Assembly (NCBI GenBank): GCA_021613535.1
Contig: CP075494.1
Location: 15,128,001 to 15,192,000 of the forward strand
DNA: 64,000 bases
Direction of reading: 5' to 3'
Source of the DNA: Adineta vaga
Taxonomy: Eukaryota; Animalia; Rotifera
The translations under genes and the position numbers were made by a program. The notes beneath the pieces were generated by a model. That model did no database searches. It was not told where the DNA came from and saw only the letters and a program-made list of their open reading frames with translations. The stretch's first letter is position 1; each line of letters begins with the position of its first letter. This document shows positions 36,772 to 42,906 of the stretch, piece after piece.

Positions 36772-38508
36772 TTATGATTTGTTCTGAAGTAATTTCTTTG
36801 CATTATTTAAACGTGAATTTAAATCACTTGTTAATTGTTCATTCATCGATTTTGTAGCACGAGCAAGTATTCTCGCTGCTTCTTCGTAATTTGTAACAGC
36901 ATTTTGATACTGACCTAATTTGTAATAACTATTACCAATTCCATCATAGAATGGAACAAGATCTGTATGTTCAGGTGGTAAATAAGTCAAACTATTTTCT
37001 AATGCTTGTTGATAATGTTTCAATGCTTTCGTATAATCACCTTTGTTCATATAATTTGTACCAAGTCCTCGATGTACACGTATAAGACGATGCGGTTGAT
37101 TAAGAACAGAAGAATCTTCAAGCATTCCAAGAAAAAATTCTTCTGCTTGATCATAATCACCTTTTTCCATGATCAGTTTGCCTAGATAAGATAATGGATT
37201 CATATAAATTTCACTACTACGTAATGATGACACAACACGAAGTAATTGTGGTTCATCATCATTAATAATGATCAATTTAATCAACCACATCATTTTCGAT
37301 TGTTCAATAATTTGTTCAATTGATTCAATACGAAATACCGTATATGCGCTGAAAAGAATTCCATCCCTTCCACTCGTTTCCATTCCAAAAACTTCTTCAA
37401 GTGAGGCAAATGGACTTCTTGTACTACGTATTGTTGAATTAGTATGTATTTCAAAAACAATACCTATCATTTCAGGATGAGTAATAAGACGATGACATAT
37501 AAAATCAATCGCTAATTCTTTGTTTGTATCAGCCATGAAGAAAGTTGCTATAGAAAGAAGACCCTGGGAATTATTTTTGATTAATGTTTCAAATAATTCA
37601 TTCGACATTGTCTTTCCACGATAGACAATCCATTTCTTTTCGGTGATAGTTGAATGATTATCTTGAAAGATATTCAATTGAGCACATACATGTTTAGCAA
37701 AGAATCCGATTTTATAATGAATATCAATTTCTTGTGTTCGTTGAATACGTTGGATGATTCGCCAAAGAAAACATTCACGTGTCAACCATATTAAAGCTTT
37801 TTGTGGACGATAATTCGTTTCGAAATCTTGAATGGCACGTAATTGTTCTTCATCATTGACATAATGTATTCGAAGGATATTAATCAATTCCGTTTTTGCA
37901 TTTATTTCAAATTTCAAACGAAAGAGCATCTCTCTCATTAATTGCATTAGAAGAAACGATGCTTCTTGTTGCTTGCGTTTCACAGATATCGAACCATCTT
38001 GATTAGAAAGAGAAAAAGTTGAAATATTGATAAGATCAAGTTCACATAAGTCAGTATCAATTTTTAATTGTTGACAAAGACTATCGATATCATAAAAAGT
38101 GTTCGATAATGATGAGGAGGAATAATCTCCATTTTCTTTACTATGTTGAAAAGATGGATCTAAAACATAGATTTTTTCTAATTGTGGTAGATTTTGAACG
38201 CAATCAAGCCATGAATCCATAATTGGTACAATTAAAAAGACTTTTTCAATGCGAATTGTATTGATATAAGTAATACATTCATTGGAATCATTGAATATTT
38301 TCAACCAAGATATCATATGGCGAAGTTTTTTTTTTTCATTTTCGATATCGAGTGACGAATTTGACAAAAACCAAATGAGAACGAAATTTTCCATAATACG
38401 AATTGATTGATTCTTCGATGCCAAACTTTGTACGACAACCGGAGGTTCATGTTTGACTTCTAGAGGTTCGACTACATTGGATTCTGGTTTTGAATATGAA
38501 CAACCCAT
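36772..38508 (-). CDS. ADP-ribosyltransferase-fold + TPR protein (degenerate catalytic motifs), intronless
   Basis: 'ALIWLTRECFLWRII', 'VYRGKTMS', 'IVFEI', 'PFA', 'ILF..YTVFRIESI' mark the ART fold. C-terminal TPRs 'LGKLIMEKGDYDQAEEFF', 'GDYTKALKHYQQALE', 'IGNSYYKLGQYQNAVTNYEEA'. Starts MGC. Confidence 0.8.
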   Translation of the reverse strand: MGCSYSKPESNVVEPLEVKHEPPVVVQSLASKNQSIRIMENFVLIWFLSNSSLDIENEKKKLRHMISWLKIFNDSNECITYINTIRIEKVFLIVPIMDSWLDCVQNLPQLEKIYVLDPSFQHSKENGDYSSSSLSNTFYDIDSLCQQLKIDTDLCELDLINISTFSLSNQDGSISVKRKQQEASFLLMQLMREMLFRLKFEINAKTELINILRIHYVNDEEQLRAIQDFETNYRPQKALIWLTRECFLWRIIQRIQRTQEIDIHYKIGFFAKHVCAQLNIFQDNHSTITEKKWIVYRGKTMSNELFETLIKNNSQGLLSIATFFMADTNKELAIDFICHRLITHPEMIGIVFEIHTNSTIRSTRSPFASLEEVFGMETSGRDGILFSAYTVFRIESIEQIIEQSKMMWLIKLIIINDDEPQLLRVVSSLRSSEIYMNPLSYLGKLIMEKGDYDQAEEFFLGMLEDSSVLNQPHRLIRVHRGLGTNYMNKGDYTKALKHYQQALENSLTYLPPEHTDLVPFYDGIGNSYYKLGQYQNAVTNYEEAARILARATKSMNEQLTSDLNSRLNNAKKLLQNKS

Positions 38509-39361
38509 TAGAGAAGAGAATAAAATTTAACATGACTTTTCATATCTTCAGATTTCTTTCATAGAGTATAAAAATAGCAGCTAAGAACATGTCGTCTCTT
38601 TCATTAGTGTTTAATAAATCTATAGAATATATGAAACAAATAGAATGCTTTTAAAACAGTCAATCTAATTTTCTTAATGACATGATTCTTTTATTGACTG
38701 TTTTAAAGTTGTTAACATAAAAAGATTTCTTCTTGAATAAGTTTATACGAAGTTCTACTTTTAGATGAGTCTTTCCCATTGATAGGTCGATGATATAAGT
38801 CATTGTCACATGTTTTCTCAGAAAAGAAAGATGTTGCGTGTTGTTAACTTAGGAAGAAGTAGTCATAAAAGGAAACATTTTCTTCCAACAACGAATTCAT
38901 TTCAATGAAAATAAAACTTCTATTAAAATCTTTAATGTAAACAAATAAAATGTCGCTGAAAGGCTTTCATTCTTTTTCGAATGTATTACGTCATTATGAT
39001 TTCATGAAAGAGAAAATATCTTCCCGTATTACGTCAAAAAATAATACAAGGTCTTCTTTTCTTCCCAAACATAGAGAAAATTTCGTTTTTCTTGCCCATG
39101 ATGATCAAACATGACGCAGTTTTTTTTCCTTTTCTTTTCGAAGCACGCTTTTTATGAGAAAGCTTCTCCATAAATAGTCAGTAAATATTGTCATTATGAT
39201 AATGATAAACAGCATGTTGTTATTTATATGAATCATTTTTTTCCTTCTGTTCTTCAGCATTTCACAATTGTCGACACATAACGTTCTTTTATAAATAGAA
39301 AACATCAATCGACTTATTTCTACTTAAGTTTTTATATACACGTAAGAAACTAACGTACAAA

Positions 39362-41814
39362 ATGGCTGAACCATCGAGCACATTTGTTTGTCCGATTACT
39401 CATGAGCTTATGATTGATCCAGTTATTGATCCTGATGGAAATAGTTACGAACGAAAAGCTATTGAAGACTGGCTTCGTCATAATCAGACTTCCCCAATTA
39501 CACGTACACCTCTCACGAGAAGCGATCTTCGTCCTAATCGTGCTTTACAAACTGCAATCAATGAATATCGTAGTTCTCTTCAACCTGGACCACCAACAAA
39601 TCATGCTTCTCAAGTAAGTTCAGCACCATGTGAGCTGACAGTCAATGGAAACTATGGAAACGGTTTTGTTCATATTTCAATTCAACCACCACCGGATACC
39701 GCACGTTCTCCATGTGATATTTGTTGTGTAGTAGATACATCAGGTTCAATGGCTGTCCAAGCTGAAATACAAAATGATTCAAATGAAAAATTTGGTTTAT
39801 CTCAATTAGACTTGGTCAAACATGCATTAAAAACGATTATACATTCACTTTTACCACAAGATCGTTTATCAATTGTATCATTTGCAAATAGTGCGACAGT
39901 TTTATTTCAATTAACAAAGATGAATGAGGATGGAAAATCAAGTGCCCTAGCAGCTTTAGGACGATTAGAGGTTTGGATTTAACTTAACATTAATCTGTCA
40001 CAATTGTGATCATAATTTTTGTTCAGGATAGTGGTCAAACAAATTTATGGGATGGTCTCCGAGCTGGTCTTGACGTTTTATCAAAAGGCCAACGAGCAAC
40101 AGGATCTAATTCAGCGCTCTTTCTTCTAACTGATGGTTGTCCTAATATTGAACCACCTCGTGGTCATTTACCTACATTAGAAAAACTAAAACAAAAGACA
40201 AATTTTACTTGTACTGTCAATACATTTGGTTTCGGTTATGATTTGGATAGTAAACTTCTTGAAGATATAGCTATATTAGGAAACGCTGGTTCCTATGCAT
40301 TTATTCCTGATGGATCATTTGTTGGAACGATCTTTGTCAATGCTGTCACGACATTATTAGCAACTGTCGCAACTAATGTTCATGTAAGAATTCAACATTT
40401 TAGAATAATAAAATACTTATTTGTATTTCATTTTTAGATATGTATCGATGGACCACGTATTGAACCCTCTGATTTTACACGATATTATTCAACGCGATAT
40501 ACCAATACAGGTACAATATTTGATATGGGTTTGATAACATTTGGTCAACAGAAAGATTTACTTATTCCTCTAATGTCTGATTCATTAAATTCTTATGAAT
40601 TTTCAATCATCTATGATACATTAGCAGAAAAACGAAAAGTAACGAAGTTTAATATCGATAAAAATCATCAACCAGCAGTTCTTCATCATATCAATCAACA
40701 AGTATTTCGTCTTCAATTGGTTCATTGTGTACGCACAGTTTTTGAAGAGATGCGTAAACAGAAAAAGAATGCAACTGGTGAAACAGAAGATTTGCGAAGA
40801 GGCATGAGTCAATTGAAAAGTTTAGAAAATGAGATGAGAAATTGTACAGATTGTAATGATGAATATATCAAAGATTTACTTGCTGATTTAACTGGACAAG
40901 TTGATGAAGCAACTTCAAGAAATGATTGGTTTTCAAAATGGGGTGTTCATTTCTTACCCAGTTTAACTCGTAAGTTTAATTAAACTTCTCTTATGAAGAA
41001 AGAAGACGAGTTTTGTTTTGTTTTGTTTTAGGTGCACATCTTCTTCAATATTGTAATAACTTTAAAGATCCCGGTGTCCAACATTATGGTCGCGGTGTCC
41101 TTTTTTCGGAAATTCGTGATGAAATGGATACTATCTTTTGTGCTCTTCCCGCCCCCAGACCATCCCAACAAACTGGTGCACAGATTGATATGTCTGTTTT
41201 TAATAATGCATCAGGTGGATGTTTTCATGGTGGATGTACAGTACGTTTAATGAATGGTACAACAAAATTAGTACAAAATGTTCAACCAGGTGATCAAATA
41301 GCACCACATGGAGGAAAAGTTACTTATGTTGTGAAAACGAAATGTACTAATGGAAAAAGTCAAATGGTTATAGTATGTATTTGTTTTGATTAGTATATGA
41401 ACAAGTTATATTTTTTACAATGATTTTTAGCTTGAAAATGGTCTTATAATTACAGCATGGCATCCAATTCGTCTTGACCATCAATGGTTAATGCCGTGCT
41501 CATTTGTTTCTGCTCCAGTTGAAGTCACTTGTGATGAAATCTATAATTTTGCACTTGATCATGGTCATACAGTATTAGTTAATGATACTGAATGTGTAAC
41601 ATTAGGACATGGATTTCAAGAAGATATTGTTCGACATAATTATTACGGAAGTGAACGAGTTATTGATGATTTACGACGACTTGATAATGAACAAAATCAT
41701 TCTGGAATTATTGAAATTACCGAACAAATCTTAATACGTCACGAACAAACAGGAAGAGTTCGAGGTTTACAACAACAAATGACTATTAAACAACAACAAA
41801 TACCAGTTCAATAA
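39362..41814 (+). CDS. U-box - vWA - Vwaint - Hint/Vint protein (5 exons)
   Basis: U-box 'FVCPITHELMIDPVIDPDGNSYERKAIEDWL...SPITRTPL...LRPNRAL'. vWA MIDAS 'VVDTSGSM', 'QTNLWDGL', 'LLTDGCPN'. Vwaint 'WFSKWGVHFLPSL.RAHLLQYCNNFKDPGVQHYG'. Hint 'GG-CFHGGCTVRL', 'LIITAWHP', 'IYNFAL'. Vint tail 'CVTLGHG...HNYYGSERVIDDL'. Introns ~39971-40027, 40384-40437, 40970-41031, 41373-41430. Confidence 0.9.
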
Positions 41815-42243
41815 CTCACTTGATCTTTTTCTGACTTCTATTTTTACACATCTTCTAATGAAATTAGTTCTTCAAAAATAAATTTTAACTTTTCTATATA
41901 AGTTCATATTTATCATCGTATAAAAGGTTTGCAGAGATGTAAAGATGCGACCTCTTCTGTAAATGATTCAATGGATAGAAAAAAGAAAACTGGATAACTA
42001 ATAAACTCACTCAACATTGATGAAGAACTAAAGTCAAAAAGATTTTTACATCAATCTGTTTAATACGTTCTTATCGGAACTTTTCTGTCGATAAAATACA
42101 CAAGCAATGACTCATAATTTGTATGAATTGCATGATCATCCTTGCAATGTCTTTCTTTTTCTATATAAAAGCTTTTGACATGTCGAATTTCACTTACATA
42201 TAAACACATACTATTTCAAAATTTTCTTCTCATAGATAGAACT

Positions 42244-42906
42244 ATGTCGCATCTTAGTAATCGATTCGTACCATTCAATGAAATTGAAGGTACTGCTTCG
42301 AACAATGTTCCAGCTTATTCAAATAAAAATAGTAGTATTTTCAACATTGGACGACATTATCTTCATGGAATTTACACTGGTTATCAATGGCAATGTGTCG
42401 AATATGCTCGTCGATGGTTATTATTACGTAAAAGTTGTATATTCAAAGATATCTCATCTGCATGTGATATATGGCGTAGTGTCTCATATGTTGAACGAGT
42501 AACTGATGGTCAACAATTTACTTTACGACCAGTTCCAAATGGTTCATCAGAAGCGCCAGTGAAAAATTCATTACTTATTTATCAACGTAGTCGAAAGTTG
42601 CCTTTTGGTCATGTAGCGATTATAACTGATGTTGTATCCGATCATGTACATGTTGCTGAACAGAATAATTTACATAATTACTGGACGAATGATTACGCAC
42701 GTCGATTACCGATTCGATTTGAAAATGGGCTTTATTATATAGATGATAAAGATACAATTTTCGGTTGGATGGTTATTGAAGATAATGGTCAATTACAACC
42801 ATTAGAAGACTCACATAAAGATCAAATTCTTCCACAATATATTCATCGACAACCAACGGGAATATTCGCACGTTTATTTACTTCGAATAGAAACCAAAAT
42901 TCGTAA
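42244..42906 (+). CDS. Stand-alone CHAP cysteine amidase, glutathionylspermidine/trypanothione amidase-type (intronless)
   Basis: 'NVPAYSN', 'YTGYQWQCVEYARRWL', 'PFGHVAIIT', 'HVAEQN', 'IFGWM'. Cys-His-Glu triad as in the Gsp amidase domain; no synthetase domain follows. Confidence 0.88.
   Translation: MSHLSNRFVPFNEIEGTASNNVPAYSNKNSSIFNIGRHYLHGIYTGYQWQCVEYARRWLLLRKSCIFKDISSACDIWRSVSYVERVTDGQQFTLRPVPNGSSEAPVKNSLLIYQRSRKLPFGHVAIITDVVSDHVHVAEQNNLHNYWTNDYARRLPIRFENGLYYIDDKDTIFGWMVIEDNGQLQPLEDSHKDQILPQYIHRQPTGIFARLFTSNRNQNS

What the first reader, a model, noticed from the sequence alone, without database searches (positions are those of the whole stretch)
39362..41814. Domesticated U-box-vWA-Vwaint-Hint(Vint) gene: a candidate self-cleaving, adduct-transferring ubiquitin ligase in an animal genome
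Seen in sequence: one spliced ORF joins an intact U-box, a vWA with a complete MIDAS (DTSGS..T..D), a Vwaint helical region and a Hint domain. The Hint keeps the N-terminal nucleophile (GG|CFHG, Cys codon 41220-41222), the block-B TxxH (TAWH, ~41452-41463) and block F (IYNFAL). It lacks the terminal His-Asn of inteins and continues into the Vint tail (CVTLGHG...HNYYGS). Established knowledge: vWA-Vint proteins are known from fungi, plants and protists rather than typical metazoans. Hints without the C-terminal Asn (e.g. Hedgehog) form a thioester and transfer the N-terminal part to an external nucleophile. Inference: this is a horizontally acquired gene, now carrying 4 short host-type introns (one inside the Hint), whose product could cleave at G|C and covalently attach a U-box-vWA E3 module to an unknown acceptor (lipid, glycan or protein). 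That would be covalent-capture ubiquitination, possibly in immunity.
Basis: partly seen in the sequence, partly recalled or inferred. Interest (0 to 1): 0.85.

Follow-up and report, generated by a model that had tools for sequence, protein, structure and literature searches.

The report
Rotifer U-box–vWA–Vint ligase gene

Summary
Window 39362-41814 (+) is a five-exon gene. RNA contigs from three studies remove all four GT..AG introns (56, 54, 62 and 58 nt), and one carries a poly(A) tail; a DNA run keeps the introns.

Exon-by-exon Pfam scans find U-box, VWA with a complete MIDAS motif, Vwaint and Vint. Both are conserved in 115-116 of 116 relatives.

The genome is Adineta vaga. Orthologues occur in Adineta and Rotaria with the same four intron positions, plus older bdelloid paralogues.

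In trees the bdelloid genes form one clade. Its sister is a gene on a 269-kb virus-like contig, then a probable protist clade. A sponge copy lies elsewhere, and an AU test rejects rotifer+sponge monophyly (p = 0.006). This supports an old transfer into the bdelloid stem.

The architecture is not new. Bürglin (2008) described VWA-Vwaint-Vint proteins, some with a U-box, and a Tetrahymena Vint crystal structure exists (8R2C, 2024). At least 37 giant-virus loci encode full-length or partial relatives.

Self-cleavage is plausible but untested. Adduct transfer and an immune role are speculation. The scan had already noted the tandem paralogues on another chromosome.

The parts
39270..39361 (+). 5' untranslated region (lower bound of the transcript start)
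   Evidence: The 2357-nt RNA contig of run X1 begins at 39270. A TATA-like tataaata lies near 39291, inside that contig, so the true start is unresolved.
39362..39970 (+). Exon 1: start codon, U-box (about 39383-39574), linker, N-terminal half of the VWA domain with MIDAS DxSxS at 39734-39748
   Evidence: Pfam U-box 2e-21 and VWA_2 1.6e-9. The exon end is set by the RNA joint.
39971..40026 (+). Intron 1, 56 nt, GT..AG, phase 0
   Evidence: Skipped in RNA contigs X1 and X5 and kept in DNA run X14. Same position in the Rotaria orthologue P0159. Absent from the C1 paralogue copy L009a.
40027..40383 (+). Exon 2: C-terminal half of the VWA domain (MIDAS Thr of GQTN, Asp of LTDG)
   Evidence: Translation. 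Invariant T208 and D239 in alignment A1.
40384..40437 (+). Intron 2, 54 nt, GT..AG, phase 0
   Evidence: RNA joints in X1 and X5. Same position in Rotaria.
40438..40969 (+). Exon 3: beta-sandwich and first helices of the helical bundle, start of Vwaint
   Evidence: Pfam Vwaint 3e-8 at residues 141-176 of the exon. AF2 model of the orthologue's core, pLDDT 93.9.
40970..41031 (+). Intron 3, 62 nt, GT..AG, phase 1 (splits an Arg codon)
   Evidence: RNA contigs X1, X5 and X6 pass from 40971 to 41037 with 3 letters between. The place is masked as repeat by the tool, so it is read from record coordinates. Same position in Rotaria P0159.
41032..41372 (+). Exon 4: end of Vwaint, linker, Hint motif A with the nucleophile Cys563 (codon 41220-41222) and the GD motif
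   Evidence: Pfam Vwaint 6e-9 and Vint 5e-6. Aligns with the human Shh cleavage site SGG|CF...PGD. Cys present in 116 of 116 relatives.
41373..41430 (+). Intron 4, 58 nt, GT..AG, phase 0, inside the Hint domain
   Evidence: RNA joints in X1, X5 and X6. Shared with Rotaria and, by exon alignment, with the C1 paralogues.
41431..41814 (+). Exon 5: Hint motif B TAWH (41452-41463), block F-like IYNFAL, Vint-specific CVTLGHG and HNYYGS, C-terminal tail, stop TAA
   Evidence: Pfam Vint 1.6e-28. PDB 8R2C E = 7e-17.
41815..41897 (+). 3' untranslated region and poly(A) site
   Evidence: An X6 contig ends at 41897 with a run of A not present in the genome (table 7).

Best explanation
The locus is a functional A. 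vaga gene for a cytosolic 740-residue protein of the known U-box-VWA-Vwaint-Vint family.

Shown here:
- The gene is transcribed, spliced at four introns and polyadenylated.
- All four domains are present.
- The metal-binding MIDAS residues and the Hint residues (Cys563, Thr and His of TxxH, and two Vint-specific His) are those kept throughout the family.
- The orthologue's C-terminal domain models onto the Tetrahymena Vint crystal structure.
- The gene belongs to a bdelloid-wide, duplicated clade whose nearest relatives are intronless genes of a large virus-like contig and of probable protists.

Inferred:
- The ancestor of bdelloids took the gene from that protist/giant-virus pool. It then gained introns and duplicated.
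- The U-box recruits a ubiquitin-charged E2.
- The VWA MIDAS face, with the beta-sandwich and helical bundle, binds a partner.
- The Vint domain makes an N-to-S acyl shift at Gly562|Cys563, giving a thioester. This frees a 562-residue U-box-VWA-Vwaint fragment from a 178-residue Vint fragment.

Whether the thioester is simply hydrolysed or thiolysed as a regulated release, or is passed to a specific acceptor, is open. I rate regulated release as more likely than adduct transfer.
For: - Gene model and domains.
- Transcripts, introns and poly(A).
- Organism: protein P0181, labelled Adineta vaga, sits on a contig of 18,146,847 bases, the length of G000 contig C1.
- Orthologues: A. ricciae 78.5%, A. 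steineri and Rotaria about 70-72% identity to the window's exons.
- Introns: all four positions identical in Rotaria P0159.
- Conserved residues: A1 invariants. Among 116 sequences, Cys 116, Thr 115, His 116, H673 116, H682 115, and MIDAS 113-116.
- Fold: AF2 model against 8R2C gives TM 0.88, rmsd 1.9 A. Next come BIL, inteins and Hedgehog 1AT0. Profile against 8R2C gives E = 3e-50.
- Core model: pLDDT 93.9, VWA + beta-sandwich + helical bundle.
- Tree: bdelloids one clade (SH-aLRT 96), sister P0196 (99), then a metagenome clade (97).
- Context of P0196: dense intronless ORFs. A neighbouring ORF matches Atlas clusters labelled 100% viruses, though the few members with a known phylum are Uroviricota.
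- Giant-virus MAG loci with full-length or partial intronless relatives: 37.
- Atlas clusters of this architecture are 63-73% Nucleocytoviricota.
- AU test rejects a rotifer+sponge clade, p = 0.006.
Against: - No biochemical evidence exists here for E3 activity or for cleavage of this or any rotifer protein.
- The residue before the Cys varies across the family (G 50, P 49, V 11 of 116). Pro at that position could slow cleavage in some members.
- The tree is unrooted and was made with quick searches. Many rows have no organism label, and several viral rows are long branches.
- The direction of transfer between virus and eukaryote is unknown.
- The AU group was named after the tree had been seen.
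- The family is old and patchy in eukaryotes (PMC2362128), so vertical descent with many losses is not excluded outright.
- I did not search or tree the window's own joined protein. Orthologues stood in for it.
Confidence: 0.72

Rival explanations
1. Vertical inheritance. The gene descends from an ancestral eukaryotic Vint gene that was kept in bdelloids (and sponges) and lost in nearly all other animals.
For: Bürglin 2008 argued for an early eukaryotic origin with many losses and reported choanoflagellate members. A sponge, Oopsacas minuta, carries a VWA-Vwaint-Vint gene on a 1-Mb scaffold.
Against: Rotifer and sponge genes lie in different well-supported clades, and their union is rejected (p-AU 0.006). 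The rotifer clade's sister is virus-borne. No monogonont or other animal appears among the 120 best hits of either search. This reading would need very many independent losses.
Confidence: 0.2
2. Adduct-transferring or 'covalent-capture' ligase. The thioester at Gly562 is attacked by a specific lipid, glycan or protein nucleophile, which tethers the E3 module to it.
For: - Hint relatives do this: Hedgehog with cholesterol, and ciliate BIL-ubiquitin-like proteins (the BIL2 structure is among the fold matches).
- The Vint domain has a conserved C-terminal extension beyond the Hint core.
- The VWA-beta-sandwich-helical core resembles inter-alpha-inhibitor heavy chain 1. From my own knowledge, that protein is ester-linked through its C-terminus to a glycosaminoglycan.
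Against: No acceptor is known for any Vint protein. The protein has no signal peptide, so extracellular glycans are unlikely acceptors. By simple alignment, the Asp shared with Shh is position 25 from the Cys, not the cholesterol-activating Asp46 of Hedgehog. I saw no counterpart of that residue.
Confidence: 0.15
3. Non-cleaving scaffold. The Vint domain has lost autoprocessing in bdelloids and serves only as a binding or regulatory domain of an ordinary U-box ligase.
For: No cleavage data exist for rotifers. Some rotifer paralogues have lost the U-box (P0001 group), which shows that modules can decay.
Against: Cys, Thr, His and the Vint-specific His residues are intact in the window's gene and in all 18 bdelloid sequences used. 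Three further Vint genes of the same genome also keep the Cys.
Confidence: 0.12

Closest known systems
VWA-Vwaint-Vint ('Vint') proteins of protists and fungi, including the U-box-bearing members (Bürglin 2008, PMC2362128; Pfam PF14623/PF14624)
   Same: Same domain order, with the U-box in front. No signal peptide. Hint motifs A and B kept, a block-F-like stretch, and no intein C-terminal His-Asn. 40-47% identity over the full length to Tetrahymena and metagenomic members.
   Different: The host is an animal, and the 2008 paper stated the family was lacking in Metazoa. The gene carries four spliceosomal introns, whereas the viral and protist relatives seen here are intronless.
Tetrahymena thermophila Vint domain, PDB 8R2C (released 2024)
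   Same: Same fold. The AF2 model of the orthologue's C-terminal part gives TM 0.88 and rmsd 1.9 A at 34% identity. The window's exon 5 matches the chain at E = 7e-17.
   Different: A different organism, and only the Vint domain was crystallised. The accompanying paper could not be read here. From memory, it proposes ligand-regulated cleavage.
Hedgehog C-terminal autoprocessing (Hog/Hint) domain
   Same: The G|CF nucleophile motif, the following GD motif and TxxH. Exon 4 aligns with the human Shh cleavage site. 1AT0 and 6TYY are fold matches.
   Different: Pfam Hint scores 25.0, below its cut-off of 29.7. There is no signal peptide and no sterol-recognition region. TM to 1AT0 is only about 0.5. 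The N-terminal cargo is an E3 module, not a signalling domain.
Plant WAV3-type RING-VWA E3 ligases
   Same: E3 domain + VWA + weak Vwaint-like region. They are the nearest named non-Vint clusters in the Atlas (score about 0.8). Bürglin noted the likeness.
   Different: They have a RING instead of a U-box and no Vint domain.
Giant-virus (Nucleocytoviricota) U-box-VWA-Vwaint-Vint genes
   Same: Full-length or partial relatives in 37 IMG/VR loci, most of them giant-virus MAGs, at 26-38% identity; 34 span at least the VWA-to-Vint region and most of those include the U-box. One virus-like contig carries the sister of the bdelloid clade.
   Different: They are intronless and viral. I found no paper describing this architecture in giant viruses. 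PMC11915834 treats viral U-box proteins only in general terms.

Membership tests
VWA-Vwaint-Vint (Vint) family | VWA domain N-terminal to the Hint-like domain | tested here: met
   Pfam VWA/VWA_2 in exon 1 and VWA_3 in exon 2. MIDAS residues invariant.
VWA-Vwaint-Vint (Vint) family | Vwaint region between VWA and Vint | tested here: met
   PF14624 at 34.2 and 36.4 bits (cut-off 23.5), covering profile positions 1-36 in exon 3 and 39-70 in exon 4.
VWA-Vwaint-Vint (Vint) family | Vint-type Hint domain with motifs A and B, without motifs J/K/L or a C-terminal Asn | tested here: met
   PF14623 at 100 bits in exon 5. Cys and TxxH present. 8R2C match. The protein ends ...QQIPVQ with no His-Asn.
VWA-Vwaint-Vint (Vint) family | No secretion signal (intracellular processing) | tested here: inconclusive
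   The N-terminus MAEPSS... runs straight into the U-box with no hydrophobic leader. No signal-peptide predictor was available.
U-box E3 ubiquitin ligases | U-box domain above the curated threshold | tested here: met
   PF04564 at 76.3 bits against a cut-off of 21.4, profile positions 5-69 of 73.
U-box E3 ubiquitin ligases | E2-dependent ubiquitin transfer | not testable with these tools
   Needs an in vitro E1/E2 assay.
Hedgehog/Hog proteins | Hog domain above threshold, with a sterol/adduct region and a secreted N-terminal domain | tested here: not met
   PF01079 scores 25.0 bits, below its cut-off of 29.7. There is no signal peptide. True Hog-type genes exist elsewhere in this genome (L006).
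Inteins | C-terminal His-Asn followed by a nucleophile, with a host protein restored by splicing | tested here: not met
   No His-Asn end and no C-extein. The protein ends after the Vint tail.
Horizontally acquired bdelloid genes | Nested among non-animal sequences in a tree | tested here: met
   The tree is unrooted and made with a quick search, which is a caveat.
Horizontally acquired bdelloid genes | Integrated in the host genome (host composition, introns, transcripts) rather than contamination | tested here: met
   GC 0.32, the same as the flanks. Lies on a 16.9-Mb chromosome contig. Spliced, polyadenylated RNA.
Horizontally acquired bdelloid genes | Absent from related animals | tested here: inconclusive
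   No non-bdelloid animal except a sponge appears among the 120 best hits of two searches. Genomes of monogononts and other Gnathifera were not searched directly.

The most novel reading that the evidence does not exclude
Bdelloid rotifers domesticated a giant-virus-type self-processing U-box ligase. Its Vint thioester covalently hands the E3-VWA module to a cellular or pathogen target, giving an E3 that tethers itself to what it marks, used in defence.
Probability: 0.06. Interest if true: 0.85.

Novelty: new member of a known kind. Interest (0 to 1): 0.36.

Why it matters
It corrects the published statement that Vint genes are lacking in animals. They are present, expressed and expanded in bdelloid rotifers, and a separate copy sits in a sponge.

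It also ties this protein family to giant viruses, where it is common but, as far as I could find, undescribed.

The biological role of VWA-Vint proteins is unknown in every organism. A cultivable animal with several intact paralogues offers another system in which to test whether a ubiquitin ligase is controlled by Hint-type self-cleavage.

As a case of bdelloid gene transfer it is one among thousands.

Tried and rejected
1. I first took the invariant Asp of the GD motif for the cholesterol-activating Asp46 of Hedgehog. Counting in the Shh alignment puts it at position 25 from the Cys, so I dropped that claim.

2. The paper behind PDB 8R2C could not be reached. A DOI recalled from memory was not held, and three text searches found nothing. 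What I say of its content is memory only.

3. The AU test on the 88-row mixture-model tree did not finish in two runs. I used a 43-row LG+G4 set instead.

Exons were used singly by reference. The A. ricciae orthologue P0170 (78.5% identical to the window's exons) stood in for alignments, trees and models.

5. Contamination was considered and rejected, given chromosome context, host-like GC, introns and poly(A) RNA.

6. Literature searches linking bdelloids with Vint or Hint domains found no paper.

Full report
**What is there.** The window is AT-rich (GC about 0.32). On the + strand between 39362 and 41814 lie five open stretches that join through four short GT..AG introns. Pfam finds the following:
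- U-box at 2e-21, 76 bits against a cut-off of 21.4.
- VWA in exons 1 and 2.
- Vwaint split across exons 3 and 4.
- Vint in exon 4 (5e-6) and exon 5 (1.6e-28).

- Cys codon TGT at 41220-41222, in GG|CFHG.
- TAWH at 41452-41463.
- IYNFAL, CVTLGHG and HNYYGS in exon 5.
- MIDAS DxSxS at 39734-39748.

The protein is 740 residues. Cys563 is the predicted scissile-bond nucleophile.

**Is it expressed and spliced?** Yes. I laid contigs of four public runs on 39100-42100.
- A 2357-nt contig of run X1 runs from 39270 to 41856 with all four introns removed.
- Run X5, which has a different organism label, shows the same spliced form.
- A contig of run X6 carries the last three exons, and another ends at 41897 in a run of A that the genome lacks. 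This is a poly(A) tail, so these are RNA.
- The DNA-sized run X14 keeps the introns.

Intron 3 lies in a stretch the tool masked as repeat. Its removal is read from the contigs' own coordinates: three letters separate window positions 40971 and 41037. That fits a 62-nt intron at 40970-41031.

**Which organism?** The genome has 100.8 Mb in six contigs. A paralogue's product, labelled Adineta vaga in NCBI, sits on a contig of 18,146,847 bases, exactly the length of contig C1. The window is at 15.13-15.19 Mb of the 16.93-Mb contig C5.

**Family and paralogues.**
- An exhaustive search with exon 5 found 2323 representatives at E below 1e-3.
- Of the best 150, at least 33 have all six pieces from U-box to Vint.
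- A search with the best hit lists many bdelloid proteins from Rotaria, Adineta and Didymodactylos.
- Compared against the window's exons, A. ricciae P0170 is 78.5% identical. A. steineri and five Rotaria proteins of 733-741 residues are about 70-72% identical. These are orthologues.
- Older bdelloid paralogue groups exist, including the tandem pair on C1 (35-76% identity by exon).
- The Rotaria orthologue P0159 has exon ends at residues 203, 322, 500 and 613, the same four positions as here.
- Introns 3 and 4 also appear to be shared with the C1 paralogues. Intron gain and duplication therefore predate the Adineta-Rotaria split.

**Origin.**
- Relatives outside rotifers are 40-47% identical. 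They include Tetrahymena, MMETSP and EukProt transcriptomes, Acrasis, Chrysoparadoxa and many unlabelled metagenomic sequences.
- 37 IMG/VR loci, most of them giant-virus MAGs, carry intronless relatives; most are full-length.
- Atlas clusters with this architecture are 63-73% labelled Nucleocytoviricota.
- In an 88-row tree (LG+C20, quick search) the 18 bdelloid sequences form one clade (SH-aLRT 96).
- Their sister (99) is P0196, encoded on a 269-kb metagenome contig. Its surroundings are dense, intronless, mostly orphan ORFs with eIF-5/eIF-2B, Tpt1 and TilS-like genes.
- A neighbouring ORF on that contig matches Atlas clusters labelled 100% viruses, though the few members with a known phylum are Uroviricota (phage), not Nucleocytoviricota.
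- Next comes a clade of 12 metagenomic sequences (97). Two of these sit in eukaryote-like contexts, probably protist, one as a tandem pair.
- The only other animal hit is the sponge Oopsacas minuta. It is intronless, lacks the U-box and lies on a 1-Mb scaffold. With four close relatives it sits in a different protist clade (98).
- Forcing rotifers and sponges together costs 67 log-likelihood units (p-AU 0.006).
- Caveats: the tree is unrooted, the searches were quick, the AU group was chosen after seeing the tree, and many rows are unlabelled.

The reading I favour is one old transfer into the bdelloid stem from a protist/giant-virus gene pool. The direction between virus and eukaryote is unknown.

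**Is the machinery intact?**
- In 25 full-length sequences the MIDAS residues and the Hint residues C563, D587, T621, H624, P625, C668, H673 and H682 are invariant.
- In 116 sequences the Cys is present in 116, Thr in 115, His in 116, H673 in 116 and H682 in 115. The window's gene has all of them.
- An AF2 model of the orthologue's residues 465-738 (pLDDT 88) shows a helical Vwaint, a less confident linker that carries the scissile bond, and a Hint beta-fold with a C-terminal extension.
- The best structural match is 8R2C, titled 'Crystal structure of the Vint domain from Tetrahymena thermophila' (TM 0.88, rmsd 1.9 A). It is followed by the ciliate BIL2 domain, mini-inteins and Hedgehog 1AT0.
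- The window's exon 5 matches 8R2C at 7e-17.
- Exon 4 aligns with the human Shh cleavage site.
- A second model covers residues 105-548 (pLDDT 93.9, pTM 0.93). It is a VWA domain followed by a beta-sandwich and a long helical bundle. It resembles a bacterial VWA protein (4FX5), archaeal ArnAB, Sec23/24 and inter-alpha-inhibitor heavy chain 1.

**How it most likely works.** The points above are shown. The steps below are inferred.
- The U-box recruits a charged E2.
- The VWA face binds a partner through its metal site.
- Cys563 attacks the Gly562 carbonyl, helped by the TxxH residues, to form a thioester. This frees a 562-residue E3 fragment from a 178-residue Vint fragment.
- The fate of the thioester is unknown. 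I rate regulated release above transfer to a specific acceptor.
- The Asp shared with Shh is position 25 from the Cys, not the cholesterol-activating Asp46. I found no counterpart of the latter.

**What is known already.**
- Bürglin (2008) defined the VWA-Vwaint-Vint family. He noted four members with a U-box, the lack of a signal peptide and the likeness to plant RING-VWA proteins, and stated that the family seemed to be lacking in Metazoa.
- A Vint crystal structure has been public since 2024. Its paper could not be read here.
- The rotifer proteins are in public databases under automatic names.
- I found no paper linking bdelloids or giant viruses to this architecture.

**Verdict.**
Foreign origin and catalytic competence are well supported by sequence. 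The architecture is not new. The covalent-capture and immunity ideas have no evidence.
- This is a new member of a known kind, of moderate-to-low interest.
- Two side results deserve a note: the family is common in giant viruses, and animals (bdelloids and a sponge) do carry it.

Noticed in passing
L001:808-2058 (G000 C6, about 0.386 Mb, near the contig end): A single-exon 416-residue gene joins a Cys/His-rich N-terminal stretch that looks like a B-box-type zinc finger (by eye only; Pfam found nothing there) and a long, apparently coiled-coil region to a complete Vint domain (Pfam 7e-43) with the nucleophile Cys kept. It has no VWA and no U-box. Relatives P0004 and P0005 (413-423 residues) exist. 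This domain combination is not in the 2008 description.
   Followed up: partly
L010:1666-5000 (G000 C1, about 16.50 Mb): A divergent fourth VWA-Vwaint-Vint gene. It appears to be preceded in the same direction by an adenylate-kinase-like P-loop region and a C3HC4 RING finger in place of a U-box. Motif A (GGCFSGEC) and TxxH (TPTHP) are kept. The gene model was not resolved.
   Followed up: partly
L006:1315-2094 and L007 (G000 C1, 13.38 and 13.33 Mb): Two genes with a hydrophobic leader, a Thr-rich stretch and a Hedgehog-type Hog/Hint domain (CFSSETMV, TPTH, SCYA). These are true Hog proteins, not Vint.
   Followed up: no
L056:8001-9998 (Oopsacas minuta scaffold) and L057: A sponge genome carries an intronless VWA-Vwaint-Vint gene without a U-box. 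Close relatives (70-76% identity) lie on large ENA contigs with animal-like neighbours (FLYWCH, exportin-T). In the tree it is separate from the rotifer clade, so Vint genes occur in at least two animal lineages.
   Followed up: partly
window 36772-38508 (-) and 42244-42906 (+): The flanking genes are a 578-residue single-exon ORF with C-terminal TPR repeats and an ORF with a CHAP (amidase) domain of bacterial type, possibly another foreign gene.
   Followed up: partly
AF2 model of P0170:105-548 (orthologue of window exons 1-4): The VWA + beta-sandwich + helical core resembles inter-alpha-inhibitor heavy chain 1 (E = 2e-13) as well as ArnAB and Sec23/24. From my own knowledge, ITIH heavy chains are ester-linked through their C-terminus to a glycosaminoglycan after propeptide cleavage. 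This is a possible functional parallel to a VWA module released by a Hint domain.
   Followed up: no
P0253 (847 residues, JGI metagenome): A relative carries a ubiquitin domain (PF00240) in addition to U-box, VWA, Vwaint and Vint.
   Followed up: no
L055:1846-6618: In a probable protist contig, two intronless U-box-VWA-Vwaint-Vint genes lie in tandem, as do the two paralogues on A. vaga contig C1.
   Followed up: no
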